DNA from: Botryllus schlosseri
Lineage: Eukaryota
Direction of reading: 5' to 3'
DNA length: 64,000 nucleotides
Assembly (NCBI GenBank): GCA_051294905.1
Contig: CM119371.1
Location: 31,930,001 to 31,994,000 of the forward strand
Program-made: the position numbers and the translations under genes
Notes under the pieces: generated by a model
Databases searched by the model: none
Told to the model about the DNA's origin: nothing
Seen by the model: only the letters and a program-made list of their open reading frames with translations
Part shown: in pieces, positions 4,290 through 34,892 of the stretch
How positions within the stretch are numbered: the stretch's first letter is position 1
How the letters are laid out: each line of letters begins with the position of its first letter

Positions 4290-5887
4290 TTTTTTTTGCA
4301 TCGTCTCTGAAGACAGCTCAACAATTTCATGGGGTTGACGGAAAAATTCGTATTCGCAGCGTTTTCATGGTAATCTGACAATTTAATCACTGTATGGCTG
4401 GAATCCAGGAAAAAAAGGTATTTTTGAACAGCCCTAATGTACACTGTACTGTGTACACTTGTTTGATCGAAACAGATCATTTTTTGAAAATGGTTCCTGT
4501 TTTCGTCCCCAATATTCATTCTGCTCTCCGTGCGAAAATACATTTATTGTTCAGATTGCTTATTCATGGTATTGGTGGTACTGCTTTACATTAAATACGG
4601 TTGGTATGATGTTGAAATTGCTACTTTTTCCTGTAATTAGGTATTAATTCATGATATTAGCTCTACTTCTGCTTGAATACCAGCAACAACTAATTTGACT
4701 TCTTTTAAGTATTTCTTTCAAGTGTTACCATCTCCATACACCAAAAATACTACACCATCTTAACAGACGGTAGATATCATATTGATTTAAAACAAAATTA
4801 ATCCAGATCACATGCAAAAACAGACAGAACAATTGATACAAACGGCGACGGACTGTAATTCATTTGTGTATCTTCTCTGTTAGCGTGTTTGTATTTAAGC
4901 GCATAATGGAGAGGTCTTCTGCTGTGGTGTAATATGATCTTCGTGCACTTTCGTGATTACATCCTCGCTTTGGTACTCAATGTCAAGAAATCTCGTTGTC
5001 ACTCTTTCTGCTGTTATCTTAGCTAATGTGTTGTGATGTTGTATTTAGTTGTACTTGGTTTTGTATAAGCGAATGAAGAAGTCACAAACACCAGTGAGAT
5101 TATGTGACCGTTGTAGTATCTGCATTTGTACGTACATTTAACCTGATCAATCGGCTAGAACTAGGAATATCATCTCCTTTTAAAAACACCCCCTTTTCTA
5201 AAAATATCCCCCGTTTTTTTAGCTGTATACGCCCCTGCCGGTAGGTAATTTCTAATTGGAATATGTCCCGGAATCAAATCACCATATCCGAGATGATTTA
5301 TTTAGTTAGGTACTCAAATTTACCAAGCACTGCCGACATCACAATGTGAGTCTTCACATCCCAGTAGGTAATTCGTATATCAACTCCTTGAATTTGGTCC
5401 TAAATGTGAACAATGATGTTGTGACATAGACTTTGTATTATTGCGACCCATAATTATTTCCAAAGACGCACATATATTCATTCTGCCATGATGTTGCAAA
5501 GATTCATTTACTTGGTCAGATTACGTAACCAAGTACCTGTCACACTTTGATCTATCTCCTCCACCTTTATGTAGTTTATGCTTTTAAACTTGCTACTTCT
5601 CATTCTAATAGAGTAGAAATTCATAGTATCGGTGGTACTTTTACTGAAGTACCAGCAATCAACACTTCCTTGGTAATCTTAAACCATCATTTTTCTGCTA
5701 CTAACAGCTAGTTTTGGTATTGTTTTAAATCGCTTCTTTCTCTTGTAATTGAATAGCAATTGACGACATGAGTTCTACATTTACTTGAAGAACTATTTCG
5801 AGCAATTTGCCTATGCTGTGTATCGGATAGTGAACTTCCGTGATTTGAAAACGTAATTTTCACCTTGTTATCTTTCAAAAATTTTAG

Positions 5888-7192
5888 CACTTGGTATTAA
5901 ACCATATTCTCTTAGATCCCAATTTCCGTGACGTTGAAGAAAAGGCTGTTGTATTGAATCGTATGGATGTCACAGACGCAAATCCTTCTTTCCGAGTAAA
6001 GAGTTGTGGATCTGATTCACAACGTGATGAACGCTCCAGTGAAAATATCTGCGAGATCTGCGGAAAAGGATTTCCCACAAAGTCTAGAATGAGGCTACAT
6101 ATGAAACTTCACACAGGAGAGAAGGAATTTGAGTGTAACATATGCGGTAAAAGATTTTTGTGGAGGTCTGGTCTAGTTGGTCATTCTCCAGTCCACACTG
6201 GAAAGAAAGACTGCAAGTGTGATATATGCGGGCAGCCATTCAGCAACAAATCCAGTATGAGACTACACAGGAAAATTCACATCGGAATTAAACAGTTCAA
6301 ATGCGATATATGTGCGAAAACCTTCATTGACAATTCCAGACTGACACAACATATGGAAGGCCATGCCGGATTCGAAGATTCTGTAATCAACATTTGCAGG
6401 AAAAGTGCTCTTCAAAGGTCTTAACTAATGTGTGATTTATGCGACAAGCCATTCAGCAGCAAATGCAATATGCGAAGACACATGAAAATTCATATCGGAT
6501 ATAAAGAGTTCAAGTGCGATATATGTGGCAAACGATTTATTCATAAACATGAGATAATGACCCACAAAAAAATTCATGACAAATTGAAAATTGACGTCGG
6601 ATTTGAAAAGTTTAAGTGCGATATATGTGCGAAGTCATTCACCAACAAACGTTATATAAAAAATCACATGAAAATTCATGTCAAATTGAAAGAGTTTGAA
6701 TGCGACATATGCGGGAAAAGATTTGGGAACCGGTGTGAGGTTAGATATCATTTTCTCGCCCACATGAATATCAAAAACTATAAATGTGATGTATGCGGGA
6801 AATCATTCATCACAAAATCTGACATGAGAGGCCACTTGAAAATTCATGACGCAGTGAAAGAGTTTGGATGTGATGTGTGCGGCAAAGGTTTCGTTAAAAA
6901 AAGTAAGTTGAGAAGACATTATTTGATTCATACTGGAGCGAAATATTACGACTGTCAATTATGCGGAAAGGGTTTTGGAGAAAAAAGTAATCTCGAACGT
7001 CATTATTTGAGCCATACCGAAAAGACCGAATATAAGTGCGACATTTGCGGAAAAGGCTTCAGAGAAAAATCTGATGTGAAATGTCATATGTGGACTCATA
7101 CCAGCAAAAAGGAAAATGCATGTGACATTTGCGGTAAGGGGTTCCGTAGAAGATCATACATTGATGTTCACATGAAGAAGGTCCACTTGTAA
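5888..7192 (+). pseudogene. Z2: 13-finger C2H2 cassette with one in-frame TAA (6422-6424); pseudogene or split gene
   Basis: ORFs 5891-6424 and 6428-7192 share one frame; paralog Z3 has CGA at the same codon; acceptor ttttag ends 5887, ATG 5963. Confidence 0.8.
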
Positions 7193-7737
7193 GCAAAAGA
7201 CTACGCGTGTGATATATGCGGTAAAGGTTATGTGAAAAAGCCTTTGCTAGTACAATGCGTAAATGAAATATCAGTTTTATGTATGTGCGAGACGATTCAA
7301 TATGAATTTGAACTTGACAACACAACAGAATTGATGCGGAAGCGAAAGTGTTCTATATAAGGAGCGCTCAAGCGCCGCTGCCGGTCTGTAACGGCTTTAC
7401 TGCCGCTCCGCCAGATATTTTGTTATTTTATACATTAGTTGCAATATACAAGATGTTGAAGTCTTGTCAATTGATAAAAAAAAGTAAAACATCAAATTTT
7501 AAACTGATGTGAAATCGCACCATTTTCAGAATTGCCACGTAAGATTAGTTCTTGTAAATAACATGTTCGATTTGACTTGACGTTCATACAGTCTCCGTTT
7601 ATGACATGCAACCGTCAACTTTCAACCTAGCTCGCTGAATCGCGCTGTTTCTATGATCATTTTGCACAGCTGTTTGCTGATGGTCAGGTGTCGGTGTTGG
7701 CAGGTATTTTCGTGTGAAACATTGTATTCGTGCTATA

Positions 7738-8466
7738 CCGTATTTTTTCGAATATAGTGTATGTATAATACGCACCCTTGAAACGCTGTGTAAATTCTGG
7801 GAAAAAGCCTGTACCCATGCATAGTACGCACCCTGCATTCGCAGTACATGAATAGTTGCCATTTAGTATTCGATGTTGTTTTGTTTTGCGATTTCACTGT
7901 CGCGCAATCATGACATAATGATCACTAATCATAATACAATTACGGCATTGTTTCTAAACGAAAGTAGATAGTAGCCAAAGCCTGCGAGGCCGATGACGCG
8001 ATAGTTCAGGCTAGCGACACACGACATCTTGCGCACGAGGCCTATTACAATTACAGATGCGATTGTTCAGGCCAACTTTTATGTCGGGCGCAACAGTCCT
8101 GTTTGCGATGCCACTGATTACGTAAGCGATTATATCTTGCGCACATGGCCTCTTGTGTATGCGTACAAACGGCTAACTAACTCAGCAGGCGATGTGCAGA
8201 CGATTCTCGTTATTTAGAACCACGCTTTTCGTTAATCGGCAACACGCTTCTCTATTTGGCAGCGTGTTACACTCTATAATACGAATTACGGGGCCCAATG
8301 GCTAGAGGTGATGCGCGATTTAAACAAACATGAATAACGGTGTGATTTCAAGTTTTTGATCGAGGGATTTTTTTTCAAGGCTTGATGTACCCATGTATAA
8401 TACGCACCCCCCTATTTTAGGGCAAAAAATCGGTAAAATATTGCGCATTATACATGGAAATTACGG
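7738..8466. mobile_element. Tc1/mariner (Tc2-like) MITE
   Basis: TA|ccgtattttt ... ggaaattacgg|TA; absent at the matching paralogous site near 14745. Confidence 0.85.
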
Positions 8467-10577
8467 TAAATTGGTATTAGCAAAAGCTAGCGCAAGTTCT
8501 TTGGTCCAACTCCGAAATGCTTCTTCTTTCGATATTGTCGAAGAGAAGGATATCATTCGCAATAGTGTAGTCCAGTGGATCTCGACTGGTGTGCCACGAG
8601 GAAATCTGGTGATTAAAGCTGACAAATAACAAAAATTGCGGAATTCAAATTCTTGACTGCGGCATAATCGCTCAAGACGCACAATGTACAATCCGATGCA
8701 ATGAACGGATAGGAGGATGTCGAAACGAATAAGCATGGTATCTTAATCTGATATTCCCCTCACCCTAATATCATTTTTCGATAATGATCTTTTCATTTTC
8801 ATTCTCTTCCTCAGATTAATTCCAAATAAGTTAATCTGTGGTTTTATTGTAAAGACGCGGTGAGCACAGCGACGTACGGAAGACAAATCACAAATATATC
8901 TTCGACACCACGGAACGTGCTACTGCTAACAAGCCCATACATATAGTAGCATTTGGAATGTGATATCTTAACAAAATGTCTTCACTCGTGCAATTTGGCC
9001 GTGATGTTGAGGTTTGGCCATTTTTTTAGTCACCCCCCATCAGAATAGGGAATAATGAACAGTGGTCTGGCCCAGTTTGATTGGTAATCCTGTTATTTAA
9101 TATTCATCATCATGCCAAATATTCGACATCTATGGTCATTTCACATCACACCGTCATTGCTTATTGTGATTCCGGAGATGCCAACTGATAGCACAGTCCA
9201 TTTTGGCTAAATGCTTTTTTTACCACACCACTTGTGCTGCAAATAAACCACCAACACTGAGGAAGAGATTCTGGAGTCGACTTTGATCGGAATCGATTCC
9301 GCAAACCATTTGTGATACAACGATGTAACGTACCACCACGATACTCGCCACCCATGGTATTTAAAGTGCTCTATGGTGCCGTGAGCTATTTTTCCTTTTG
9401 AGAGGGTTGTAATGAAGCCGAAAAGGTTGAGAACCACTGGTGTAGTCGGTTAATCCACGGCCTTCGGCGGGGGAGACCTCTATCGAGTCTTGGCGATAGC
9501 TCGTTTATGTGGAAGAGACAATTTTACCTTGACTCTAGAGACACACTACCGCCAAATTACATGACTATCATGAACACAAGGAAAACCCTCCAAATGTCAC
9601 TCACTAGTACCATACTAGTATGAAACGGCTGCAAACTGTTATCGTAATTGCATTTCGGTTTGATTTAGGTGTTTGAAGGTTCACTGGTCTGCCGACGATA
9701 TTTTCAAATTTTACAGGTCTGTGACCTATCAAAGGTTGCGAGCCACTGCTCCATATGTGGAAACAGAATTTTTTTAAATCAGTTAACGACTTTGTAAATC
9801 AGATTACCAGCACTATTATGAGTGAAAATGTATTTCATGTCTGTAATCGCTCTGTAATACGAATGTGAAGTAATATTTTTTGTTATTGCACCTACACTGC
9901 TATTTTCATCGCTTTTATTCATTCCTTGTTAGTCTCAAAGATGCTTCTTCTTATATGGACTGTTTACCTGCATAGCCTACTTCTCAAACATTCAAATATG
10001 TGGGGCATGATGTGTAAATTGCTGCTTTTTCTTCTTTTTGCGCATTGTTTCGACCTGAGTAAATGGATGTAGTGGGCAATGAGCAAGGTATCACGACAAG
10101 GTGCTTGGTTTAATTCAGAAACGCTTCTCTCGACATTGTCGAAAAGAACAATCTTAATCGAGTGTGCGTGCTCGGTTAAATCCATGGCTTTTGGCGCGAA
10201 ATTCTACAATCGACTCCCGGCGGTGTCACGTTTATCTTGACAAGAAAATCGATGATTTCAATTTTCGAAAGTCCACCGATCCGCCGAATACTTTTTGAAA
10301 TTTCAACGGTCCGCGAGGTGGAAAAAATTCGAAAACCACTGACCTACAGTGCTATTTTTATCGCCATTATTCATTCTTTGCTGGTCTCGAAGTTGCACCT
10401 ACTAATATGGACTGCTTATTTGTGTTGCCTACTTCTCAAAACTTGAGTTTTTACTTCAAATAGGTTTGACATGATGTGTAAATTGCTACTTTCTTCTTGT
10501 AATCGAGTAGGAATTCATGTTATTGGCTCAACTTCTGCTTGAATACCATCAGCGACTAATTTGACTTCTTCCGAGTA

Positions 10578-10810
10578 CCGTCATTTTTCAAGTATAGTAC
10601 GCCCCCATCTATAATACACCCCCTGAAAATGATATGTACATTATGGAAAAAAGCCTTTACTCGTTTATAGTACGCACCCTGCTCGAGCGGTACATGCGTA
10701 GAAGCCGATTATACAAGCTTATCGTGTTGACATACTTGCACGTATGATAAGTTACCAGCGATGGTTATGTTTCAGTATTAGCGGAAATCGATTAGGAACG
10801 TTGTCTAAAG
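10578..10810. mobile_element. Old 5' fragment of the Tc2-like MITE
   Basis: ta|ccgtcatttttcaagtatagtacg; same flank (atttgacttcttccgag) and internal sequence as the copy at 26760. Confidence 0.65.
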
Positions 10811-11560: not shown

Positions 11561-11564
11561 CTTA

Positions 11565-12481: not shown

Positions 12482-12872
12482 TACTTATATAGGTTACTTG
12501 TGAAAGCTTTGTTTTTACTTCGGATAGGTTTGGCATGATGTGTTAATCTGTTTCGAGTACTATAATCATATCATATGTTGCACTGAAATATTTGATTCAA
12601 AATTAATATCTGTGATCGAATCACTTGGGTTCTCTGAAGTAACCACTCATAGCTGCGTGACCTGTTTGAATTCGATCCTAAATGTGAACAATAAAGATAT
12701 GACATTGACTCTGTATGATGGCAACCGTTCATTATTTAGAAAGATGCACGTTTCGGAATTACTCCCTTTTCGCGAAGATACAACTACTAATTTGCCTATG
12801 CTGTGTATCGGATAGTGAACTTCCGTGATTTGAAAGCGTAATTTTCACCGTGTTATCTTTCAAAAATTTCAG

Positions 12873-14183
12873 CATTTGGTATTAAACCATATTCTCTTTG
12901 ATCCTAATTTCCGTGACGTTGAAGAAAAGGCTGTTGTATTGAATCGTATGGATGTCACAGACGCAAATCCTTCTTTCCGAGTAAAGAATTGTGGATCTGA
13001 TTCACAACATGATGAACGTTCCAGTGAAAATATCTGCGAGATCTGCGGAAAAGGATTTCCCACAAAGTGTAGAATGAGGCTACATATGAAACTTCACACA
13101 GGAGAGAAGGAATTTGAGTGTAACATATGCGGTAAAAGATTTTTGTGGAGGTCTGGTCTAGTTGGTCATTCACCAGTCCACACGGGAAAGAAAGACTGCG
13201 AGTGTGATATATGTGGGAGGCCATTCAGCAACAAATCCAGTATGAGAATACACAGGAAAATTCACATCGGAATTAAAGAGTTCAAATGCGATATATGTGC
13301 GAAAACCTTCATCGACAATTCCAGACTTACACAACATATGGAAGGTCATGCCGGTTATGAAGTTTCTGTAATCAGCATTTGCAGGAAAAGTGCTGTTCGA
13401 AGGACTCGACTAATGTGTGATGTATGCGAAAAGCCATTCCTCAGCAAATGCAATATGCGAAGACACATGAAAATTCACATCGGATATAAAGAGTTCAAGT
13501 GCGATATATGTGGCAAACGATTCATTGAGAAAAAAGATATGATAAATCACAAAAAAATTCATGCGAAATTGAAAATTCACGTCGGATTTCAAAAGTTTGA
13601 GTGCAAAATATGTGCGAAGTCATTCACCAAAATACAATACATGAAAAATCACATGAAAATTCACATCGAATTGAAGGAGTTTGAATGCGGCATATGCGGG
13701 AAGAGATTTAGGCAACGGGGTGAGGTTGAATATCATTTTCTCGCCCACATGGGTATCAAAAACTATAAATGTGATGTATGTGCGAATGCATTCATCACAA
13801 AATCTGAACTAAGAAGACACTTGAAATTCCATGACGGAGTGAAGGAGTTTGGTTGTGATGTGTGCGGCAAAGGTTTTGTAACAAAAGGTCACTTGAGGAG
13901 ACATTATTTGATTCATACCGGAGCGAAATTTCACAACTGTCATATATGCGGATTGGGTTTTGGACAGAACCATCATCTCAAACGTCATTATTTGACTCAT
14001 ACCGACAAGAAGGAATATAAGTGTGACATTTGCGGAAAAGGCTTCAGAGAAAAATCTGATTTGAAATGCCATTTGTGGACTCACTCAAACAAAAAGAAAG
14101 ATTTGCCAACATGTGACATTTGCGGTAAGGGATTCAGTAGTAGATCATACATTAGAAGACACATGAAGAAGGTCCATTTATAA
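12873..14183 (+). CDS. Z3: intact C2H2 zinc-finger protein exon, 13 fingers plus one degenerate finger
   Basis: Open frame from acceptor tttcag (ends 12872) through ATG 12948 to TAA 14183; 13 CxxC...HxxxH motifs; no KRAB/ZAD/BTB seen. Confidence 0.9.
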   Translation, partial: HLVLNHILFDPNFRDVEEKAVVLNRMDVTDANPSFRVKNCGSDSQHDERSSENICEICGKGFPTKCRMRLHMKLHTGEKEFECNICGKRFLWRSGLVGHSPVHTGKKDCECDICGRPFSNKSSMRIHRKIHIGIKEFKCDICAKTFIDNSRLTQHMEGHAGYEVSVISICRKSAVRRTRLMCDVCEKPFLSKCNMRRHMKIHIGYKEFKCDICGKRFIEKKDMINHKKIHAKLKIHVGFQKFECKICAKSFTKIQYMKNHMKIHIELKEFECGICGKRFRQRGEVEYHFLAHMGIKNYKCDVCANAFITKSELRRHLKFHDGVKEFGCDVCGKGFVTKGHLRRHYLIHTGAKFHNCHICGLGFGQNHHLKRHYLTHTDKKEYKCDICGKGFREKSDLKCHLWTHSNKKKDLPTCDICGKGFSSRSYIRRHMKKVHL

Positions 14184-15979: not shown

Positions 15980-16200
15980 CAGTGGACATGGTAGAAATAA
16001 TTTAATAAATTTGTAGTACAAGAGAGATACTTTCCTACATTCTTAGGTAGAAAGTACACGTCCTTACTAAGAAGCTTGCCAAGTACGCTCAACAGCAGTA
16101 GTTGTGGGCTGACAACACTCAAATTGTGCGTACACTGCTGGTGACACACCGTATTGCTTCATCACAATTTTTCATCATGCGCTTCTTAATATAAGAGTGA
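15980..16200 (-). mobile_element. Possible decayed hAT transposase C-terminal dimerisation segment
   Basis: Minus-strand frames give CCQPTTTAVERT followed, after a frame change, by LGKLLSKDVYFLPKNVGKY, resembling the hATC P-x-S-x-x-VERxFS motif. Recognised by eye only. Confidence 0.4.
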
Positions 16201-16956
16201 TGCAATGCCCACGAATTCTTTCTTCAGTTAGGATATTGCGTTCCGTTGACCATAACATCATGTCTACCTATTTGTCTCATTTGAATGTCTACGCTTCACA
16301 ATGAGCAGACAATGATCCATATACAACGGTAGTCCTATAAAGTAGGCTAAAAACTGTAAAATGTCAAACGATAAGTTCACAGACAGTGCAAAATCTACGA
16401 TACAAACGAAATGCAGACGTCAAAAAAAACTTTATGAAAACTATTAAAAAATTTTGACGTGTCAAAAAAAAAGCCCTAATCATAAGTCATACCGGAATAT
16501 TTGATTCGAAGGTAATATTACTCTCGGAATCCAAACACTTGTATACTTTATTTTACCCAGCCATTGCCACCTGGCCTTATTGAACTTTGTCCTAAATGTG
16601 AACAGTGAATCTATAACGTAGTCTCTGTATGATCGCAACTCCTCATTAATTTAGATGATGAACATTTCTTAATTCCCCCTGGTCGCGAAAATGCATCTAG
16701 GTATTCGAACTACTTAATTGAGTACTTTTCACAGCTTAATCTTTCTACTGCTCTTTTATGTAGTTTTGGCATGCTTTAGAAATTGCAACTTACACTTAGA
16801 GTAGATGTTCACAATATTGGTGGTACTGCTACTTGTGTACCAACAATGAATACTTTATCAAAGATCTCATGCCATCATTCTGCCTCAACTAGTTTTGCTA
16901 TGATTGCTGTCATTTGAAATCTGTTTTAAACGCTGTAATCTTTTTAAAAATTTCAG

Positions 16957-17904
16957 CACTCAGTCAAAAACCATATTAGTCCTAATATTTATCACGGAGA
17001 TGTTAAGGAAAGTGCCGCTGTATTGAATCATATGGACGTCACAGACGAAAATCTTTCTTGTGGAGTAAGCGCTGGCGGTGCCGATTCAAAACGCCATGAC
17101 AGCTGCGGTGAAAATATTTGCGAGGTCTGTGGAAAAGAATTGAAAAGCAAATCTCATGTTGGACGCCATATGAAAATTCACACAGGGATTAAAAAGTTTG
17201 AGTGTGACATATGCGGTAAAAAGTTTTTGCGGAGGGCTCACCTAGTTCTTCATTCTCCATTCCACACAGGAATGAAAGACTACAAGTGTGATGTCTGCGA
17301 AAAGTCATTCAGCAACAAATCGAACATGAGAAATCACATGAAAATTCACGTCGGATTTAAAGAGTTTGAGTGTGATATATGTGCAAAGTCATTCACCAAC
17401 AAACATAAAATGATAGATCACCTGAAAATCCACGTCGGATTTGAAGAGTTTGAGTGTGATATATGTGCGAAGCCATTCTTCCACAAACATCACATGATAG
17501 ATCACATGAAAATTCACGCCGAATCGAAAGAATTTGAATGCTACATATGTGGAAAATCATTCATCGCAAAATCTGAACTGAAAATTCACATTAAATTTCA
17601 TGACGGAGTTAAAGAGTTTCTGTGTGCTGTATGTGGTAAAGGTTTTGTAACAATAAGTAATTTAAGAAGACATTATTTGATTCATACCGGAGCGAGAGAT
17701 TACCAATGTCATATATGCGGAAAAGGTTTTGGACGGAAAGGTCATCTCAAATATCATTATTTGACTCATACCGACAAGAAGAAATATAAGTGCGACACTT
17801 GCGGTAGAGGCTTCGATCAAAAGTTTGAACTGAAACGTCATTTTTCGACTCATACCAACAAAAAGGAATACATGTGTGACATTCCGTTGAAGATCATACA
17901 TTGA
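16957..17904 (+). CDS. Z4: C2H2 zinc-finger protein exon, 9 fingers; tenth finger broken by a 14-nt deletion
   Basis: Acceptor tttcag ends 16956, ATG 17032; tgtgacatt|ccgttg lacks the tgyggyaagggatt present in paralogs (ATT microhomology). Confidence 0.8.
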   Translation, partial: HSVKNHISPNIYHGDVKESAAVLNHMDVTDENLSCGVSAGGADSKRHDSCGENICEVCGKELKSKSHVGRHMKIHTGIKKFECDICGKKFLRRAHLVLHSPFHTGMKDYKCDVCEKSFSNKSNMRNHMKIHVGFKEFECDICAKSFTNKHKMIDHLKIHVGFEEFECDICAKPFFHKHHMIDHMKIHAESKEFECYICGKSFIAKSELKIHIKFHDGVKEFLCAVCGKGFVTISNLRRHYLIHTGARDYQCHICGKGFGRKGHLKYHYLTHTDKKKYKCDTCGRGFDQKFELKRHFSTHTNKKEYMCDIPLKIIH

Positions 17905-18895
17905 AGTACACATGTAGAAGTTCCACTTGGAAACAAAAGAGTACGAGTGTGATATATGCGGAAAAGGTTTTGTGAGAAAGTCTTGGTTACAAAATATTAT
18001 AATATCCTCACTTGATTGAAAAACCACTGTTAAGTATGTGGCAGACGATTTAAGGTTTTGTTGAGATATCAGTTAATGACCTAGTAAAGTAGATTTCATC
18101 ACTGTCATGGCTCATGAGTGTAATTGTCTTGGATGAAACTCTGTAATATGAATTTGACAGAGTGTTTTTTTACTAATTGCACCTACAGTGAATTTCATCA
18201 GCATTATTCATTGCTTACTGGTCTCTAAGATGCATCTGCCATACTGTTTGCTTACTTTTTAGCCTACTTCTCTTACCTTGTTTTTTTTTACTTCAAATAG
18301 GTTTGGCAGGATGTGTAAATTGCTAATTTTCTTTCAATTTTTAGAAATTCGTGGTGTTGGTTCTACTTCTTCTTCCATACCAGCAATGACTAATTTGACT
18401 TGTTCTAAGTATGTTGTATGTAAAACAGTGATCCTCTGATTTGAAAAGCTACTTATCATGAATTATTCTATTGAAAATTTTGCAAACAACATTCAATCGA
18501 CTCTAACATCTGAAAAAAAGTGCTATAGCGTAGTGTTGGTCTAGAAATACGAAATTATTTTGGATGAAGTGTAACTAGCATCATTTTCCCTAAATCCGCA
18601 AAAAGATGGTTATTCAAACGTTTCAAATCAAAATAAGTGTACAAATTTTGTTATATAATAGGTTGTACTGGAATATTTGATTCAAAGTTAATACTTGTAT
18701 TTGTCACGTATTCGAATAATTTAGGTACTCTACTTTATGGCATATACTCTGTATGATTATAACCTTTCGTTATTTCGAAAGATGCACGTTTTTTAATTCC
18801 TCGCTGCTCACGAAGATGCATCTAGTTATTCAGATAACTTCATTGATTACTTGTTACACTCTTATTTTACTACTGCGTCTTCTTGTAGTTCTGGC

Positions 18896-19404
18896 TGGGG
18901 CTGGGCAAAATCGAGTTCCTAAGTGATTTGATTTCGAATCAAGTAATATGCTTTGAGTCGAGTAATCGAGTATCACTCATTATGACGACATAACAGGATA
19001 AAAATGTCTAAGCTCAAATATGTACCTTTTATGCAACCACAAAGAATATAATGCCTTTTATCCATCACATTAAAGATAGTTTGGTATTTTTGCGACCATA
19101 CCGATTTCATTGCAATTGGTGACAATGTTGTGGGATGGCCATGACTTCTGAAGTGTGCTATTTCCAGTAACGTTTGTACATTGTACTATATGTTTCGTAT
19201 GCTACGATATGGGCAATCAAGGTTTCAAGGCTTCAACAGTGAATATTAGTATCTAAACTATAATTCCGTTGATAAATTAACTTTCAGTTGCAAGGGGCGT
19301 ATATTTGTGGTACACGAAAAAATCGTCTTTTACTACTCGGCTCGAATCAATAAAATTAATTCTCATTTCATACTCAAGTACTTGAATCATTTTGCCCAGC
19401 CCCC
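18896..19404. mobile_element. hAT-type MITE (GGGGCTGGGCAAAAT TIR)
   Basis: ggggctgggcaaaat / attttgcccagcccc; flanks gttctggc and gttatggc (7/8 TSD); paralogous sites read tgtagttttggcatgct uninterrupted. Confidence 0.85.
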
Positions 19405-19707
19405 GTTATGGCATGCTAGTAGATTGCTACTTCCACTTTAAAATTTGTTGAAATTCAAAATATTGGCGGTACTGCTTCTTGTGTGCCAGCAATGACTACT
19501 TTTTCGATAATCTTGTGCCATCATTCTGGTTCAAGTAGTTTTAATATGCTCTGAAAATCGCTATTTAAATTTGTCAATGAGTAAAAATTCACAATAATAC
19601 TAGTTCTGTTTGTACTTGAAGATTGTTTTGACCACCTTTGGCTATGCTTTGCATCGAATAGTTCTGCGGTTTAAAATGCTGCTTTTCACGCTGTAATCTT
19701 TTATCAG

Positions 19708-21036
19708 CACATTGTCAAAAACCATAATATTCCTAATATTTATCACTGCGATGTTAAGGGAAAGGCTGATGTATTAAGTCATATGGACGTCACAGACACA
19801 AGTCCTTCATGTGCAGTAATAACTGGCGGAGCCGATTCAAAACGTCATGGTGGCTCCGGTGAAAATATTTGTGAGGTTTGTGGAAAAGGATTCAAAAGCA
19901 AATCTCGTGTCGGACGCCACATGAAAATTCACACGGGGATGAAAAACTTTGAGTGTGACATATGCGGGAAGAAGTTTTTGCTGAGGGATCACCTAGTTCG
20001 TCATTCTCCATGCCACACGGGAAAGAAAGACTACAAGTGTGATGTATGTGAGAAGCCATTCAGTCATAAATCGAGCATGATAAATCACATGAAACTTCAC
20101 GTCGAATTTAAAGAGTTTGCGTGTGATATATGTGCGAAACCATTAATCAACAAACATCAGAAGATAGCTCACATGAAAGTCCATGCTGAAATCAAAGAGT
20201 TTGAATGCGACATATGCGGGAAAAGATTTGTGAGAAGGTCTCAGCTAAAAGTTCATTCTTCCACCCACACTGGTATAAAAGACTATAAGTGCGATGTATG
20301 CGAGAAGACATTCATCACAAAATCCCACATGAGAAATCACATGAAAATTCATGTCGGATTGAAAGAGTTTGAGTGTGAAATATGTGGCAAAAAGTTTTTC
20401 ACGAGATCCAACCTAGTTAGTCATTCTCAATTCCACAAGGTAAAGAAGGAATTTGAGTGTGATGTATGCGAGAAGCAATTCAGCCTCAAATTAAACATGA
20501 CAAATCACATGAAAATTCATATCGGATTGAAAGAGCTGAAGTGCGATATATGTGCGAAACCATTCTTATACAAACGTAACATGACAACTCATATGAAAAT
20601 GCACATCGAATTGAAAGAATTTGAATGTGACATATGCGGTAAAAGATTTGTGGAACGGGATAAGCTGAAATATCATTTTACTGCCCACATGGGAATCAAA
20701 AACTATCAATGTGATGTATGCGGGAAAACATTCATCACAAAGTCTGAACGGAGAAGTCACTTGAAATGTCATGAAGCGAAAAAGTTTATGTGCGGTGTGT
20801 GCAGAAAAGGTTTTGCAACAGAAAGTCATTTGAGAAGACATTATTTGGTTCATACCGGAGCGAAAGATTACGAATGTCATATATGCGGGAAGGGCTTTGG
20901 ACTAAAAGCTCATCTGAAACGTCATTATTTGATACATACCGGGGTGAAAAATTATGAATGTCATATATGCGGAAAGGGTTTTGGACTGAAATCTCATCTT
21001 GAACATCATCATTTGACTCATGCTGACAAGAAGTAA
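19708..21036 (+). CDS. Z5: C2H2 zinc-finger protein exon, 14 fingers
   Basis: Acceptor ttttatcag ends 19707, ATG 19783, 417-aa ORF, TAA 21034-21036. Confidence 0.9.
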   Translation, partial: HIVKNHNIPNIYHCDVKGKADVLSHMDVTDTSPSCAVITGGADSKRHGGSGENICEVCGKGFKSKSRVGRHMKIHTGMKNFECDICGKKFLLRDHLVRHSPCHTGKKDYKCDVCEKPFSHKSSMINHMKLHVEFKEFACDICAKPLINKHQKIAHMKVHAEIKEFECDICGKRFVRRSQLKVHSSTHTGIKDYKCDVCEKTFITKSHMRNHMKIHVGLKEFECEICGKKFFTRSNLVSHSQFHKVKKEFECDVCEKQFSLKLNMTNHMKIHIGLKELKCDICAKPFLYKRNMTTHMKMHIELKEFECDICGKRFVERDKLKYHFTAHMGIKNYQCDVCGKTFITKSERRSHLKCHEAKKFMCGVCRKGFATESHLRRHYLVHTGAKDYECHICGKGFGLKAHLKRHYLIHTGVKNYECHICGKGFGLKSHLEHHHLTHADKK

Positions 21037-21746
21037 TATAAGTGCAACATTCGCGGAAGAGGCTTCGGACAAAAGTTTGAATTGAAACGGTATTTCTGAA
21101 CTCGCACCAACAAAAAATGAACATGCATGTGACATTTGCGGTAAGGAATTCCGATGGAGATCATACATTGAAGTAGACATAAAGAAGGCTCACTTGTGTA
21201 AGCAAAATAGTACGAGTGTGATATATGTGAGAAAGTTTTGAGAAAAGTCTTAGTTAGAAAATTATTAAACATGTGGGACACGATTCTCTAAATCCAATAG
21301 CTCATATATGAGATATTGACCAGCCCTAGTAGCCACCACAATGTGAGTGAGGCTGTATATGCCAGTATCTATTAGTATTTACTGCTCAAATTTTATCCAA
21401 AATATGTACAACGGAGATGATGCTTGTGTACTCTATGATAACGCCAGAAAAGAATTAAACAATTAAGACCCGCTAAACGTTTGAGAGCTGTGTTCCAGAC
21501 AGGGGGCATCATTGCATATATGTGACGAAATAGGTTTAAAAATAACGATTTCCCTATATATCTGCTATGTTCTGGTAATATTCGAAAAATCCGTTTAAAT
21601 ATGAAGAAGGAAAACACAACGTTCTGCTACTTTTGGTATGTATTGTGCGAACCTTGATATTTCAGAGGTTTGTGTTTGGAAACCAACGTTTGGATGTTCT
21701 AGGCCTACTCTATATTGTACAGGACAGGTACATTCCTCTTTAATAG

Positions 21747-22530
21747 CACATTTTTTCACGGCGACGTTAAAGAAAAGGCTGTTGTATTTAATCTTATGAA
21801 TGTCACAGGCACAAATTCTTCTTGCCGAGTAAGAAATGGCATAGCTCATTCACAACATCATGATAGCTGCAGCGAAATTATTTGCGAAGTCTGCGGAAAA
21901 GGATTCAAATGTAAGTCTTACATGGAACGCCATATGATAAGTCACACTGGAGTAAAAACGTTTGGATGTGATATATGTGGGATAAGATATGCACAAAGGT
22001 CGGCCTCAACTGTTGATTTCCATATGGAAATGAAAGACAATACTTGCGATCGGTGCAGGAAACCGTTCCGCATCAAGTCCGACATGAGAAGACACATGAA
22101 AATTAACATTGGATTTAAAGAGTTTGAGTGCAATATATGTGCATGTCACTTATGTCCCACATGAGATCTCATTTTACCTCCAATACAAGAATTAAAAAAA
22201 ACATAAGTGTGATGTATGTGGAAAACGATTTGTCAACAAATCCGTTGTGAGAGAACACATGCAAATTCATGAAGTTGTGAATGAGTTTGAGTGCAGTATA
22301 TGTAATAAAGGTGGTGTAACAAAATAGGATTTGGAGAAACAATTTATGATACATGCCAGAGCCAAAAATGACGACTGTCATATATGCGGAAAAAGTTTTA
22401 GACAAAAGGGTCAATTGAAATGTGATTATTAGATTCACACCCACGTGAAAGAACACAAGTACGACATTTGTGGTAAAGCAAAAGAGTATGAGTGCAATAT
22501 ATGCGGGAAAGCTCGCCTTAAAAACCAATA
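21747..22530 (+). pseudogene. Z6: degraded ZF cassette
   Basis: Leader GDVKEKAVVFNLMNV and first fingers recognisable; later fingers have lost Cys/His and contain frameshifts and stops. Confidence 0.85.
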
Positions 22531-24384: not shown

Positions 24385-24816
24385 ATATAGACTCTGCATG
24401 TGCATAAACGATTTGAAATTCCGTCTTGGTCACAAAGATGCATGTAGCTATTCAGACTACACATTTGCGTACTTGTCACACCCGAATATTTCAACTGCTC
24501 TTTTATATGCAACAGTTTCGTCATTCTTTGGACATTGCTACTTCCAATTTTAGTAGAGTATAAATTCACAATATTGGTGGTACGACTATTTGTGTGCCAA
24601 CAATGACTACTTTGTTGATCACTTCGTACCATCATTGTGCTTCAATTAGTCTTGGAATGCTTTGAAAATTGCTATTTTAACTTGAAAATATGAAAAAATT
24701 CACAACGATATAAGTTCTTGTGAAAGATTGTTTTGACCACCTTTGGCTATGCTTTTTAGCGAATAGTCAACTTCTGCGATTTGAAAAGCTGCTTTTCACG
24801 CTGTAGTATTTTTTAG

Positions 24817-26145
24817 AACTTCATCATAAACCACATTATTTTTAATATTTATCACTGCCTTGTTGAGGAAAAAGCTGTTGTATTGAATCATATGGACGTC
24901 ACAAAAACAAATCCTGCATGTGCTGTAGTAACTGGCGGAGCCGATTCAAAACGTCATGGCGTCTCCGGTAAAAATATTTGTGAGGTCTGTGGAAAAGGAT
25001 TCAAAAGGAAATCTTCTGTCGGACGCCATATGAAAATTCACTTGGGTAGGAAAAACTTTGAGTGTGACATATGCAGGAAGAAGTTTTTTCAGTGGTCACA
25101 CCTAGTTCTTCATTCTCCATTCCACACGGGTAAGAAAAACTGCAAGTGTGATGTATGCGAGAAACCATTCAGCAAAAAATCGAATATTAGATATCACATG
25201 AAACGTCACATCGGATTTGAAGAGTTTTCGTGCAATATATGTGCGAAACCATTCATCAACAAACATCAGATGATAGATCACATGAAAATCCATGCTGAAT
25301 TCAAAGAGTTTGAATGCGACATATGCGGAAAAAATTTTGTGAGAAGGTCCCATCTAAAATATCATTCTTCCACCCACACAGGAATAAAAGACCATAAGTG
25401 TGATGTATGTGGGAAATTATTCATCAGCAAACATCAGATGATTGCTCACATGAAAATTCATGTTGAATTCAAAGAGTTTGAATGCGAGATATGCGGGAAA
25501 AGATTTATGAAAAGATCTGAGCTAAAATATCATTTTCCCACCCACGCTGGAATAAAAGACTATGAGTGCGATGTATGCGACAAGCCATTCAGCACAAAAT
25601 CTCACATGAGAAATCACATGAAAATTCATATCGGATTGAAAGAGTTGAAGTGCGATATATGTGCGAAACCATTTTTTTACAAACGTAACATGACAAATCA
25701 CATGAAAGTTCATGTCAAATTGAAGGAATTTGAATGTAACATATGCGGTAAAAGATTTGTGGAACGGCCTCAGCTAGAATATCATTATTCCGCCCACATG
25801 GGAATCAAAAACTATCAATGTGATGTATGCGGGAAAACATTCATCACGAAGTCTGAACGGAGAAGTCACTTGAAATTTCATGAAGTGAAAAAGTTTGGGT
25901 GCGGTGTGTGCGGAAAAGGTTTTCTAACAAAAAGTCATTTGAGAAGACATGATTTGGTTCATACCGGAGCGAAAGATTACGAATGTCATATATGCGGGAA
26001 GCGCTTTGGACTAAAAGCTAATCTGAAATGTCATTATTTGATACATACTGGGGTGAAAAATCATGAATGTCATATATGCGGAAAGAGTTTTGGACAGAAA
26101 TCTCATCTCGTACATCATTATTTGACTCATGCTGACAAGAAGTAA
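24817..26145 (+). CDS. Z7: C2H2 zinc-finger protein exon, 14 fingers
   Basis: Acceptor ttttttag ends 24816, ATG 24892, TAA 26143-26145; close paralog of Z5. Confidence 0.9.
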   Translation, partial: NFIINHIIFNIYHCLVEEKAVVLNHMDVTKTNPACAVVTGGADSKRHGVSGKNICEVCGKGFKRKSSVGRHMKIHLGRKNFECDICRKKFFQWSHLVLHSPFHTGKKNCKCDVCEKPFSKKSNIRYHMKRHIGFEEFSCNICAKPFINKHQMIDHMKIHAEFKEFECDICGKNFVRRSHLKYHSSTHTGIKDHKCDVCGKLFISKHQMIAHMKIHVEFKEFECEICGKRFMKRSELKYHFPTHAGIKDYECDVCDKPFSTKSHMRNHMKIHIGLKELKCDICAKPFFYKRNMTNHMKVHVKLKEFECNICGKRFVERPQLEYHYSAHMGIKNYQCDVCGKTFITKSERRSHLKFHEVKKFGCGVCGKGFLTKSHLRRHDLVHTGAKDYECHICGKRFGLKANLKCHYLIHTGVKNHECHICGKSFGQKSHLVHHYLTHADKK

Positions 26146-30169: not shown

Positions 30170-30605
30170 ATGTAGACTCTGCATTTGCATACACGTTTTG
30201 AAATTCCGCCCTGGTCACAAAGATGCATGTTGTTATTCAGACTACTCATTTGCGTATTTGCCACACACTAATCTTTCTATTGCTCTTTTATGTGTGTTAG
30301 TTTTGGCATGCTTTGGACATTGCTACTTCCACTTTCATTAGAGTATAAATTCACAATATTGGTGGTACGACTATTTGTGTACCAACAATGACTACTTTGT
30401 TGATGACTTCACACCATCATCGTGCTTCAATTAGTCTTGGAATGCTTTGAAAATTGTTACTTTACCTTGAAAAAATGAAAAAATTTCCAATGATATAAAT
30501 TCGCCTTGTGAAAGATTGTTTTTGCCACCTTTGGCTATGCTTTGTAGCGAATGATCAACTTCTGTTATTTGAAAAGCTGCTTTTCATGCTCTAATCTTTT
30601 TTTAG

Positions 30606-31610
30606 CACTTTATCATAAACCACATTATTGTTAATATTTATCACTGGATGTCAAGCGTGTTGTATTGGATCATGTCGACGTCACAGAAAAAAATCCTGCA
30701 TGAGTAATAATACCTGGTGGAGTCGATTCAAAACGCTATGGCGGCTCCAGAGAAAATATTTGTGAGGTCTGTGGAAAAAGATTCAAAAGCAAATCTCATT
30801 TCGGACGCCATAGGTAACAAAAACTTTGCGTGTGACATATGCGGGAAGAAGTTTTTGCGGCGGTCTCATCTAGTTCTTCATTCTCCATACCACACGGGAA
30901 AGAAAGACTACAAGTGTGATGTATGTGAGAAGCTATTCAGCCATAAATCGAACATAAGAAATCACATGAAACTTCACGCCGGATTTAAAGCATTTGCGTG
31001 TGATATCTGTGTGAAACCATTCATCAACAAACATCAGGAGGTAGCTCACATGATGAATTGAAAGAGTTCGAATGTGACATATGCGGAAAAGATTTGTGAG
31101 AAGGTCTAAGCTAAAAGATCATTCTTCCACCCACAAGAATAGAAGACTATAAGTGCAATGTATGTGGGAAATTATTTACCACAAAATCTGAACTGAAAAT
31201 ACACGTGAAATTCCATGACGGAGAGAAAGAACTTGAGTGTCGTGTATGCGGTATATGTTTTGTCACAAATAGTTATTTGAAATATTACAAATGTCATATA
31301 TGTCGGAACGGTTTTGCATTGAAATGTAATCTTAAACATCAATATTTGACACATACCGACCAGAAGGAATATGAATGCGACATTTGCGGAAGAGGCTTTC
31401 GACGAAATTTTGAACTGAAACGTCCTTTTTCCAGCCATATGCACAAGAAAAAATATACGTGTGACATTTGCGGTAAGGAATTTCGTTGGAGATCATACAT
31501 TGATGTACACATGATGATGGTCCACCTGGAGCAAAATAGTACGAGTGGGATATATGCGGAAAAGGTGTTGTGAGAAAGTTTTGGTTAGAAAATCATTATT
31601 CCATGCACGC
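30606..31610 (+). pseudogene. Z8: frameshifted ZF cassette related to Z4/Z5/Z7
   Basis: Acceptor ttttttag ends 30605; leader out of frame; finger-coding pieces in 30717-31061 and 31205-31573 separated by frameshifts and stops. Confidence 0.9.
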
Positions 31611-33525
31611 GTAAACGAAATAGGTCTACCAGTGTTAAGAATTAGACTTGTAGACGTAACAGAATTTCATGCGGAAGTAAAAGTGCAATATATGAGGAAA
31701 TTTTTTTTGTGAAAAATCAGTTGACGACCTAGTGACTGGAGTGAAATTTTATTGGATGAAATTCTATGACAGCTGTTTGATGAAAACCGTAATATGAATG
31801 TGACAGAATATTTTTTCGTTAATTACAATTACAGTGCTATTTTATTCTCCACTATTTGTTCCTTGCTGGTCTCGGCGATGCATCTTCTTATACAGAATGC
31901 TTACTTGTGTAGCCTACTTTCAAACCCTTGTGTTTTACTCCAAATAGGTTTGCCATGATTTGTAATTTGCTAAATTTTTTGTACTTAAGTAGAAATCCAT
32001 GGTATCGGCTCTACTTCTGCTTGATTACCAACAACGTCTAATTTGACTTCTTCTAACTAGGCCTATATTGAGTATCAAACAGTGATGATATGTCATTTGA
32101 AAAGCTGCTTATTATGAATTATTCTAATAAAAAATTTTGCAAGCAACATTTTATCGACCCTCACATTTGACACGAAGTACTATAACATAGTTTTAGTCTA
32201 GAAATATGAGATTACTTTGGATGAAATATAGTTAGCATAATTTTCCCTAACGCCCCAAGAAAATGCATATTCAAATGTTCTAAGTCATTATTTCTGTTGC
32301 TATATGCTGCTATATAGCCTAATAAGTCATACCGGAATATTTGATTCAAAGTTTATATTCGTTTCGTAATCGAATACTTAGGTACTCTAGTTTACCCAGC
32401 CACAGCCGCTGAATCTGCTTAAATTTTGCCCTGAATATGAACAATGAAATTATGACGTAGACTATTTATGATCGCACTGTTCAATATTTCAAAAGATACA
32501 GGTTTCTCAAGTCCGCCTCAATCTCGAATATGCATTTAGGTATGAGGACTACATAATTAGTACTTATCACACCGTAATCTTTCCACTGCTCTTTTTTTCC
32601 AATTGCTACTTTTACTTGTAAATGAGTAAAAATTCGCAATACGTACTTGAAAGATTGTTTGAGATACTACCTGGACTTCAATCTATATGATACCCAAAAC
32701 GTTACCAATGCGTTTATTTCTTGTGTCATTTCACTACACTGACCTTATTTTACATGTCATTTATAATTACCAAATTACATTCCGTTAAAATTGATCTGTT
32801 TCTTGATTAAAGGTTTTGATCATTATGTGTGATTCCATGACAAAGGCCACCATTGAAACACCAAATTATTCTGATAATATTCGTGACCACTGAACAATGA
32901 ACATACAGGTAAATTTGGAGGGAAACGCACGGACTCCCGAATTGTAACTTGTACGCATACTCTATATGAATACTACATCCCCTTCTATCAGCAGCTTAAC
33001 TTGTTCCCTTTCTCGATGTTGACTTTTTCAAGTTGAATACCTAGTTACCTAACTTCTTATCACTGTCATGAGTGAAATTGCATCACATTTATGCGATATA
33101 GGCTTTTGTAGTGTGATTTTGACAGATTTTGCACCGATCTCACCTATTGTCATTGGCATCATTCATTCCGTGCTTGTATTGAAATTGTGACATCCACTTG
33201 CAGTTGAGTGGAAATTCACATTATTGCTTGTACTTCTACTTGTGTACCAACAATGATTACAGGCCACTCTTCACTAAGTACTTGACACACTACCATCTTT
33301 CTCATGTACCTTCCTGTAGTTTTGGCATGGCTTGGAAAATCTACTTCCACTTGTAATTGAGTAGAAATTCACAGTATTTGTTTACCTCCTACTTGTTTAC
33401 CAGCAATCCAAGACCATCATTCTGCTTCAATTAGTTTTGCATATCCGCCTATGCTGTGTATCGTATTGTGAACTTCTGTGATTTCGAAACGTACATTTCA
33501 TCCCATATACCTTTAAAAATTTTAG

Positions 33526-34892
33526 CACTATGTAATAATCCATATTATCTTTGATCCTACTTACCGTGACGTTAAAGAAAAGGCTGTTGTATTGAATCAT
33601 ATGGATGTGACAGAACTAAATTCTTTGTGCCGAGTAAGGAATTGTGCATCCGATTCACAACGTGATGAAGACTTCAGGGAAAATACCTGTGAGATCTGCG
33701 GAAAAGGATTTACCATGAAGTTTAGTATGGGGTTCCATATGAAAACTCACACAGGAGACAAGGAATTTGAGTGTGACATATGCGGGAAAAGATTTATGCA
33801 GAGGTCTCACCTCCTTATTCATACTCCAGTCCACACAGGAAAGAAAGATTACAAGTGTGAGGTATGCGGAAAGTCATTTACCTACGAATCCAATATGAAT
33901 CAACACATGAACATTCATATCGAATTTAAATAATTCGAATGCTATATATGTGTGAAACCCTTCATTGACAATTCGAGCATGACAAAACACATGGAAAGTC
34001 ATACCGGATTCAAGCCATGATCAACATTTGCGGGCAAAGTTCTGTTCAAAGGTTTCAACTAATATGTGATGTATGTGAGAAGCCATTCAGCAATAAATCC
34101 AATATGAGAAATCACATGAAACTTCACGTCGGGTTTAAAGAGTTTGTGTGTGATATATGTGCGAAACCATTCATCAACAAACATCAAATGAGAAATCACA
34201 TGAAAATTCACGTCGAATTGAAAGAGTTTGAGTGTGACATATGTGCGAAACCATTCAACACCAAGCATCAAATGAAAAATCATATGAAAATTCACGTCGA
34301 ATTGAAAAAGTTTGAATGTGACATATGCGGTGAAAGATTTGTGGAAAGAAATGAGCTAAAATGTCATTTTTTCGCCCACATGGGAATAAAAAACTATCAA
34401 TGTGATGTATGCGGGAAATCATTCATCACCAAATCTGCACTTGGAATCCACTGCAAATTTCATGGAGTGAAGGAGTTCGGGTGTGATGTGTGCGGCAAAG
34501 CTTTTGTAATGGAAAGTAATTTGAGAAGCCACTATTTGATTCATACTGGAGCGAAAAATTACAACTGTCATGTATGCGGAAAGAATTTTGTACGGAACCA
34601 TCATCTCAAACGTCATTATTTGACTCATACCGACAAGAAGGAATATGAGTGCAATATTTGCAGAAAAGGCTTCAGACTGATATCTGCAGTCAAACAACAT
34701 TTCGCGACTCATACCAATAAAAAGGAATATACATGTCACATTTGCGGTAAGGGATTCCGTTGGAGATCATGCATTGAAGTACACATGAACAATGCTGAGC
34801 ATGAGCATGAGTGTGATATATCCAGAAAATGTTATGTGAAAAAGTATTGGTTAGAAAATAATTATATGGGAGACGATTCAATATCAATTTAA
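33526..34892 (+). pseudogene. Z9: ZF cassette of the Z2/Z3 subfamily with nonsense codon (33931-33933) and frameshift (about 34015)
   Basis: Acceptor ttttag ends 33525, ATG 33601; aaa TAA ttc gaa tgc where paralogs have a Glu/Gln codon; downstream ORF 34017-34892 keeps 9 fingers. Confidence 0.85.

What the first reader, a model, noticed from the sequence alone, without database searches (positions are those of the whole stretch)
5860..33610. Six ZF cassettes start with a splice acceptor exactly 75 open in-frame nt before the ATG: possible alternative-terminal-exon or trans-spliced ZF array
Seen: Z2, Z3, Z4, Z5, Z7 and Z9 begin after a pyrimidine-rich YAG (exon starts 5888, 12873, 16957, 19708, 24817, 33526); several have a CT(G/C)TAAT branch-like motif just upstream. 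In all six the ATG is +75 nt, in phase 0 and stop-free, although the 25 codons diverge widely (HLVLNHILLDPNFRDVEEKAVVLNR vs NFIINHIIFNIYHCLVEEKAVVLNH). No KRAB, ZAD, BTB or SCAN domain is visible and I found no donor conserved in every unit. Known: Drosophila lola and mod(mdg4) splice shared 5' exons to arrays of alternative ZF exons, and tunicates use spliced-leader trans-splicing. Inference: the cassettes may be variable last exons of one gene whose constant exon lies left of the window, or SL acceptors. Caveat: Z10-Z13 acceptors are phase 1, so one constant exon cannot serve all units.
Basis: partly seen in the sequence, partly recalled or inferred. Interest (0 to 1): 0.75.

Follow-up and report, generated by a model that had tools for sequence, protein, structure and literature searches.

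The report
Zinc-finger gene array with shared 5' leader
This is a tandem array of recently copied, finger-only zinc-finger genes and dead copies in a sea-squirt genome; the "splice acceptor plus 75 open bases" was inherited with each copy, is most likely an untranslated leader, perhaps the spliced-leader attachment site, and is not evidence of one giant gene with alternative last exons.

Summary
Six cassettes have a pyrimidine-rich YAG, then exactly 75 stop-free in-frame bases, then ATG; a decayed seventh (Z8) keeps the same acceptor. The six sites are copies of one ancestral sequence, not six independent events. Each duplication unit carries about 0.3-0.6 kb of collinear, non-coding 5' flank.

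The open frame is weak evidence. 24% of random 25-codon windows in the window's intergenic DNA are open, and an open ancestor stays open in all six in about 8-10% of neutral simulations. dN/dS cannot decide, because the true N-terminal coding part evolves just as freely.

Evidence against a lola-like shared exon:
- the ATG is conserved;
- Z11, Z12 and an outside relative start 7 codons further up, at an ATG in good context;
- Z12 has an in-frame stop in its leader;
- Z10-Z12 acceptors sit 7-8 bases further down, in another phase;
- no effector-domain exon lies in the window.

No upstream donor is conserved, and intact Z3 has none. Earlier notes of this scan call the genome a stolidobranch ascidian. 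An unpaired acceptor used for spliced-leader trans-splicing is therefore my leading reading. It is unproven: two bulk RNA runs gave no reads on Z4 or Z5. Ordinary; low interest.

The parts
5388..5887 (+). Z2 5' flank (candidate promoter plus outron/intron), collinear with the flanks of the other units
   Evidence: stops in all frames
5888..5962 (+). Z2 leader, 75 nt, after TAG acceptor
5963..7192 (+). Z2 zinc-finger ORF, disabled by an in-frame TAA at 6422-6424
12570..12872 (+). Z3 5' flank. It is shortened by a deletion of about 330 nt relative to Z2. No donor-like GT of 4 bits or more
12873..12947 (+). Z3 leader, 75 nt, after CAG acceptor
12948..14183 (+). Z3 intact ORF, 411 aa, 13 C2H2 fingers
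16479..16956 (+). Z4 5' flank, uninterrupted version of the ancestral unit
16957..17031 (+). Z4 leader, 75 nt. A second AG lies 7 nt further in, at the position used by Z10-Z12
17032..17904 (+). Z4 ORF, 290 aa, 9 fingers, last finger lost
18655..19707 (+). Z5 5' flank, split by a repeat insertion at about 18896-19404
19708..19782 (+). Z5 leader, 75 nt, with two short out-of-frame uORFs
19783..21036 (+). Z5 intact ORF, 417 aa, 14 fingers
21703..22164 (+). Z6 decayed cassette. It keeps the conserved 3' part of the leader and the ATG at 21796
24417..24816 (+). Z7 5' flank
24817..24891 (+). Z7 leader, 75 nt, after TAG acceptor
24892..26145 (+). Z7 intact ORF, 417 aa, 14 fingers
30530..31573 (+). 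Z8 decayed cassette. The same T7AG|CAC acceptor stands at 30606, the leader has indels and the ATG is lost
32322..33525 (+). Z9 5' flank, split by an insertion at about 32596-33195
33526..33600 (+). Z9 leader, 75 nt, after TAG acceptor
33601..34892 (+). Z9 ORF, disabled by a TAA at 33931 and a 4-nt deletion
39039..39497 (+). Z10 truncated copy. Both ATG positions are lost (GTG) and the acceptor look-alike lies 8 nt further 3' (phase 1)
40701..41855 (+). Z11, 340 aa ORF starting at the upstream ATG 40833 (ataatcATGg). Its leader is 15 nt shorter
44002..44283 (+). Near-identical second copy of Z10
45803..46852 (+). Z12, ORF from the upstream ATG 45830. An in-frame TAG at 45803 closes the leader frame
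49721..50673 (+). Z13 broken cassette. Its leader is cut by the insertion at 49405-49720

Best explanation
The window holds a tandem array of about 13 separately transcribed, finger-only C2H2 zinc-finger genes and pseudogenes, made by repeated duplication of one unit. The unit is: a non-coding 5' flank of about 0.3-0.6 kb, a YAG, a 75-nt leader, an ATG, one exon with 9-14 fingers, and a 3' flank. The acceptor, the 75-nt spacing and the open frame were inherited together by descent. In the six cassettes the +75 ATG is the start codon and the leader is 5' UTR. Its last 21 nt are coding sequence in paralogues that start at an ATG 7 codons further up (MAAVLNRM...), which explains why that part is the best conserved and is open. 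I infer, but have not shown, the following mechanism. Transcription starts in the conserved 5' flank. The flank is an outron without a partner donor. The AG is an unpaired acceptor to which the ascidian spliced leader is trans-spliced, giving an mRNA of SL plus 75 nt plus ORF. My probabilities: separate genes with the leader untranslated, about 0.75; the AG used for SL trans-splicing, about 0.45.
For: Array and fingers. Homology of the six sites and of about 500 nt upstream, with insertions tolerated only more than about 170 nt before the AG. The flank has stops in every frame. No donor is conserved, and intact Z3 has none of 4 bits or more. The flank is T-rich on the sense strand (34-40% against 30%). 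Ciona outrons have a median of about 458 nt and are U-rich, and about 60% of Ciona trans-splice sites lie in the 5' UTR (PMC11155486). SL goes only to unpaired acceptors (PMC1488885). There is a sharp boundary at the AG: 1-6 gap events per pair in the 80 nt before it, essentially none after it. The ATG is kept in 9 of 11 copies. The upstream in-frame ATG with A or G at -3 and G at +4 occurs in Z11, Z12 and the outside relative P0122/L001. Z12 has an in-frame TAG in its leader. Earlier notes of this scan state that the genome is a stolidobranch ascidian with SL trans-splicing (not tested here).
Against: There is no RNA evidence. Two bulk RNA-seq runs (about 23 million reads read) gave no genuine reads on Z4 or Z5, and the contig runs look like unspliced DNA. 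So neither an SL junction nor any junction was seen. The leader keeps frame 0 open in all six (P about 0.08-0.10 given an open ancestor). It has no indels among the six, and the only leader indel between clades is 15 nt, in frame. This pattern would also fit a translated leader. The -3 position of the +75 ATG is C, a poor context. Acceptor look-alikes of this strength are common, 3.7 per kb.
Confidence: 0.5

Rival explanations
1. There is no splicing at these sites. Transcription starts at or just downstream of the AG (YAG|CA also looks like a pyrimidine-purine initiator) or reads through it. The acceptor look-alike is a chance motif copied with the unit.
For: Such YAG sites occur 3.7 per kb. 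The AG position is not the same in the Z10-Z12 clade or in L001. The change in indel density at the AG would equally mark a transcription start. The only read near a cassette (X17, about 19776-19919) lies downstream of the AG.
Against: The AG and a pyrimidine tract are kept at the same aligned column in seven copies, although indels lie right next to them. Every clade keeps one AG after a T-rich tract within 10 nt. About half of ascidian genes are SL trans-spliced (PMC4691747).
Confidence: 0.2
2. Each cassette has its own short non-coding first exon in the conserved 5' flank, cis-spliced to the AG. This could occur alongside SL trans-splicing, as in Ciona genes with weak first donors.
For: Collinear 5' flank in each unit. 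Scattered donor-like GTs in Z2, Z4, Z7 and Z9. In Ciona, trans-splicing often uses the first cis acceptor where the paired donor is weak (PMC11155486).
Against: No donor is at a conserved position. Intact Z3 has no donor-like site of 4 bits or more in its 300-nt flank.
Confidence: 0.15
3. The leader is translated. Each cassette, or the Z2-Z9 clade only, receives an upstream coding exon of its own in phase 0, so the true protein has a longer N-terminus.
For: Frame 0 is open in all six while the other frames carry 1-4 stops. There are no indels in the leader and the 15-nt gap between clades is in frame. The uATGs lie only out of frame. The +75 ATG has a weak context.
Against: No ATG-initiated phase-0 exon is conserved in any flank. 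The flank has stops in all frames. Codon positions change equally, for example 9/9/10. Openness is only P about 0.1. The disabled copies Z2 and Z9 are open too. Z12 has a stop in its leader. The profile search found no longer N-terminus among 1.84 billion representatives.
Confidence: 0.06
4. This is a lola/mod(mdg4)-like locus. The cassettes are alternative terminal exons joined, in cis or by genic trans-splicing, to constant exons left of the window.
For: All cassettes lie on one strand. Six share a phase-0 acceptor and an open leader. No effector domain is in the cassettes. The array continues past the left edge of the window (a cassette tail at 4-342).
Against: The ATG is conserved, and an alternative upstream ATG with good context exists in paralogues. 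Phase differs in Z10-Z12 and Z12 has a stop. Each unit duplicates about 0.5 kb of its own 5' flank. There are no reads across 6 kb of the array in two RNA runs. No BTB or other exon lies in the window.
Confidence: 0.04

Closest known systems
Lineage-specific tandem clusters of poly-C2H2 zinc-finger genes
   Same: Head-to-tail copies on one strand, one large finger exon, fast turnover with intact and decayed copies side by side, and non-finger parts that evolve almost neutrally.
   Different: There is no KRAB, SCAN, BTB or ZAD effector exon. The linkers are not TGEKP. The short N-terminus has no relatives apart from one Logan contig.
SL trans-spliced, non-operon genes of Ciona (Satou 2006, PMC1488885; Yokomori 2016, PMC4691747; Yokomori 2024, PMC11155486)
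   Same: An acceptor in the 5' UTR shortly before the start codon, no partner donor, and a U-rich 5' transcribed region a few hundred nt long.
   Different: No SL-bearing read was seen here. I did not establish the SL of this species. The Ciona 16-mer is not in the window, and none is expected there.
Drosophila lola and mod(mdg4)
   Same: A row of zinc-finger-coding cassettes on one strand, each preceded by an acceptor.
   Different: Here each cassette has 9-14 fingers, its own conserved ATG and its own 5' flank. Acceptor phase is not uniform, and no constant BTB exons are in view.

Membership tests
C2H2 poly-zinc-finger genes | Tandem C-x2-C-x12-H-x3-5-H fingers matching Pfam zf-C2H2 / zf-H2C2_2 | tested here: met
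   118 finger motifs on the + strand; PF00096 E=1e-52 to 1e-60 and PF13465 E=1e-52 to 1e-67
Effector-domain ZNFs (KRAB, SCAN, BTB, ZAD) | An N-terminal effector domain in the protein or in an upstream exon | tested here: not met
   No such Pfam hit in the cassettes including the leader or in ten intergenic ORFs. The N-terminal profile has no relatives except P0122
lola/mod(mdg4)-type alternative terminal exon array | All alternative exons accept the same constant exon, hence one common phase and an open frame from the acceptor | tested here: not met
   Six are phase 0. Z10-Z12 are phase 1, 7-8 nt further 3'. Z12 has an in-frame TAG after its acceptor
lola/mod(mdg4)-type alternative terminal exon array | Shared upstream constant coding exons (BTB) | not testable with these tools
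   None in the window.
lola/mod(mdg4)-type alternative terminal exon array | RNA junctions from one donor into many acceptors | tested here: inconclusive
   No genuine RNA reads on 14800-20799 in X13 and X17
Ascidian SL trans-spliced gene | Unpaired acceptor upstream of the start codon (no partner donor in the 5' transcribed region) | tested here: met
   No conserved donor in the flank, and none of 4 bits or more in the flank of intact Z3. The criterion is from PMC1488885
Ascidian SL trans-spliced gene | Outron of typical length and U-richness | tested here: met
   Collinear flank of 300-590 nt with T at 34-40%. The Ciona median is about 458 nt and is U-rich (PMC11155486). This feature is permissive, not specific
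Ascidian SL trans-spliced gene | mRNA 5' ends carrying the SL joined at the AG | tested here: inconclusive
   Z4 and Z5 are silent in both RNA runs read. The contig runs are unspliced and DNA-like
Ascidian SL trans-spliced gene | Host organism performs SL trans-splicing | not tested
   This rests on earlier notes of the scan for this genome and on the literature for ascidians

The most novel reading that the evidence does not exclude
The 25 leader codons are translated because the Z2-Z9 cassettes are alternative last exons, or genic trans-splicing targets, of a gene whose constant phase-0 exon lies left of the window. That would be a lola/mod(mdg4)-like zinc-finger isoform array in a chordate.
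Probability: 0.04. Interest if true: 0.8.

Novelty: new member of a known kind. Interest (0 to 1): 0.15.

Why it matters
It matters little beyond annotation. The start of the finger exon in this family should be modelled as a 5'-UTR acceptor, probably an SL site, with translation starting inside the cassette and not as a fragment of a larger multi-exon gene. A small side point is the start-codon shift: some paralogues start at MAAVLNRM, while the six start 7 codons later. It shows how a formerly coding stretch can pass for an open leader. If the unlikely lola-like reading were true, it would be the first such ZF isoform array in a chordate.

Tried and rejected
- RNA junctions. I laid two bulk RNA runs and two contig runs on 14800-20799, which covers the flanks and acceptors of Z4 and Z5. 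Only repeat-derived partial reads appeared (16000-16600, 18800-19400). No junctions or loose ends fell at 16957 or 19708. The contig runs cover intergenic DNA and cross 19708 unspliced, so they are DNA-like.
- Exact-product look-ups for Z3, Z5, Z7 and Z11 were blank.
- The word-index protein search on residues 1-70 of leader plus Z3 was blank. A profile of ten N-terminal parts returned only generic finger hits.
- The exhaustive profile search of leader plus N-terminus found one relative, P0122. Its 1.2-kb Logan contig L001 is unspliced, 65-72% identical and frameshifted. It gives no 5'-end information but does show the upstream ATG.
- dN/dS on the leader was done. It is uninformative, because the true N-terminal coding 87 nt shows the same flat codon-position pattern.
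- The consensus fold of the leader is -4.7 kcal/mol with one compensatory pair, so it is not a structured element.
- The Ciona SL 16-mer has no match in the window.
- Rfam finds nothing on the window.
Full report
WHAT IS THERE

The window carries 118 C2H2 finger motifs on the + strand and 3 on the - strand. They are grouped in about 13 cassettes between 1 and about 50.7 kb. Pfam sees only C2H2 finger families in them, also when the 25 leader codons are included.

Z3 (411 aa), Z5 and Z7 (417 aa each), Z11 (340 aa) and Z12 have uninterrupted ORFs. Z4 has lost its last finger. The other copies are damaged:
- Z2 has an in-frame TAA at 6422.
- Z9 has a TAA at 33931 plus a 4-nt deletion.
- Z6, Z8, Z10, its twin at 44002, and Z13 are fragments.

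To the right of the array, at 58216-58941 on the - strand, lies an unrelated LDL-receptor class B-like ORF.

THE OBSERVATION

All six coordinates are exact: (T/C)AG, then 75 nt without a frame-0 stop, then ATG.
- Frames 1 and 2 of the same 75 nt hold 1-4 stops each.
- The 22 nt before the AG are 59-73% pyrimidine.
- The exact CTGTAAT motif is present only in Z4 and Z5.
- Decayed Z8 has the same T7AG|CAC at 30606.
- The phase-1 caveat for Z10-Z12 is right. Their AG lies 7-8 nt further 3' in the alignment.

ONE EVENT, NOT SIX

The six sites align without gaps from the AG through the first finger. The whole 300-590 nt upstream of the AG is collinear between units:
- Z2: 5388-5887.
- Z4: 16479-16956.
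- Z7: 24417-24816.
- Z5 and Z9: the same, with a 0.5-0.6 kb insertion each.
- Z3: the same, with a deletion of about 330 nt.

Each unit also has a conserved 3' flank. So the duplication unit is flank, AG, leader, ORF and 3' flank. The acceptor, the spacing and the frame were inherited together.

IS THE OPEN FRAME MORE THAN CHANCE?

In this window's intergenic + strand DNA, 24% of 25-codon windows are stop-free. I evolved an open ancestor neutrally along the six-copy tree at the observed divergence (p about 0.36). All six stay open in 8-10% of runs. For the first 18 codons alone the figure is 11-21%, about 11% when the simulation is scaled to the divergence seen in those 54 nt. The signal is therefore weak.

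Codon positions differ equally in the leader, for example 9/9/10 for Z2 against Z4. The pN/pS ratio is about 0.5-0.6 for deep pairs.

A stronger feature is the boundary at the AG. In the 80 nt upstream, nearly every pair shows 1-6 gap events. The leader has none in the multiple alignment, and the one gap that separates Z10-Z12 from the rest is 15 nt. This marks the AG as a real boundary of constrained sequence. It fits an exon start, a transcription start or coding sequence.

WHERE TRANSLATION STARTS

The ATG is kept in 9 of 11 copies. The exceptions are truncated Z10 and its twin, which have GTG.

Z11 and Z12 carry a second in-frame ATG 7 codons further up, in good context (ataatcATGg, aaagtgATGg). 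The six have AAG, AGT or AAA at that position.

The only relative of this N-terminus among 1.84 billion representative proteins is P0122. It sits on a 1.2-kb Logan contig that is 65-72% identical, and it has the same upstream ATG (MAGVLNEM).

The 21 nt before the six's ATG are therefore coding sequence in paralogues. This explains why GCTGnTGTATTGAATCnTATG is the best conserved stretch of the whole 5' region and why it is open.

Z12 has an in-frame TAG (45803) between its candidate acceptor and its ATG, so in that clade the leader is not translated from upstream.

The uATGs in Z4, Z5 and Z9 open uORFs of only 1-8 codons that end before the main ATG (sequence reading).

IS THERE AN UPSTREAM EXON?

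- The conserved flank has stops in all three frames in every unit.
- No ATG-initiated phase-0 exon and no donor is conserved.
- The 300-nt flank of intact Z3 has no donor-like GT of 4 bits or more.
- Ten intergenic ORFs have no Pfam domain.

MECHANISM

Earlier notes of this scan say the genome is a stolidobranch ascidian that uses a spliced leader. I did not test this.

What is known from Ciona:
- SL trans-splicing goes to acceptors without a partner donor (PMC1488885).
- About half of the genes are trans-spliced, and outrons peak near 100 bp with a mean of 438 bp (PMC4691747).
- About 60% of major trans-splice sites lie in the 5' UTR, and the 5' transcribed regions are U-rich with a median of about 458 nt (PMC11155486).

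The flanks here are 300-590 nt long and 34-40% T, against 30% for the window. They also lack a conserved donor.

I therefore read each cassette as its own gene. Its promoter lies in the flank, the flank is an outron, and the AG is an SL acceptor 75 nt before the start codon.

What is shown: the anatomy, the homology, the absence of a donor, and the start-codon evidence. What is inferred: transcription from the flank and SL addition.

RNA

Two bulk RNA runs, about 12.9 and 10.0 million reads read, gave only partial matches to repeats at 16000-16600 and 18800-19400, plus about one read near 19776-19919. There were no joints or loose ends at the acceptors.

The two contig runs cover intergenic DNA at low depth, and one contig crosses 19708 unspliced, so they behave like genomic DNA. 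Z4 and Z5 are silent or nearly silent in those samples, and the mechanism stays untested. Exact-product look-ups and word searches found no transcripts of the family.

VERDICT

The lola-like reading is unlikely, about 0.04. The SL-acceptor reading is the best available, about 0.45. The rivals are no splicing (0.2), a local non-coding first exon (0.15) and a translated leader with its own upstream exon (0.06).

Noticed in passing
window 40833 and 45830; L001 443: Start-codon shift within the family. Z11, Z12 and the outside relative start at an ATG in strong context 7 codons before the ATG used by Z2-Z9, which have AAG, AGT or AAA there. Z10 and its twin have lost both ATGs.
   Followed up: partly
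window 342-1363, 7192-8612, 14183-15458, 17904-19069: No AATAAA or ATTAAA on the + strand for 1.0-1.4 kb after the stops of Z1-Z4. So 3' ends are either long or use other signals. No operon-like juxtaposition with the next acceptor was seen.
   Followed up: partly
window 16000-16600 and 18800-19400: Repeats in the flanks of Z4 and Z5 are very abundant in the RNA and contig runs. Loose ends include a tRNA-like tail, which suggests a tRNA-derived SINE family.
   Followed up: no
window 28943-29020: An orphan copy of the acceptor-proximal 80 nt without a cassette behind it, directly before the Z8 flank. It is probably the remnant of a deleted unit.
   Followed up: no
window 49405-49720: The insertion noted earlier as carrying a hammerhead core ends about 10-15 nt before the ATG of Z13, so it cuts that cassette's leader.
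   Followed up: partly
window 16613-16956: One contig of run X7 ends exactly at the last base before the Z4 exon start, with 5 unmatched letters. This is most likely a contig break at a polymorphism, and the run looks like DNA.
   Followed up: no
window 5901-5906 with 5960-5965, and the same columns in the other five: CCATAT in the leader is complementary to ATATGG around the start codon in Z2, Z3, Z4 and Z9; Z5 and Z7 each have one mismatch. The predicted helix is weak and shows no covariation.
   Followed up: partly
window 58216-58941 (-): ORF with a weak LDL-receptor class B (YWTD) match followed by a cysteine-rich, EGF-like stretch (my reading of the sequence, no Pfam hit). It belongs to an unrelated gene on the opposite strand, to the right of the array.
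   Followed up: no
window 12570-12600, 16480-16510, 29180-29210, 32320-32350: The best conserved motif of the 5' flank is ACCGGAATATTTGATTC, whose CCGGAA core resembles an ETS site. It could be a promoter element.
   Followed up: no
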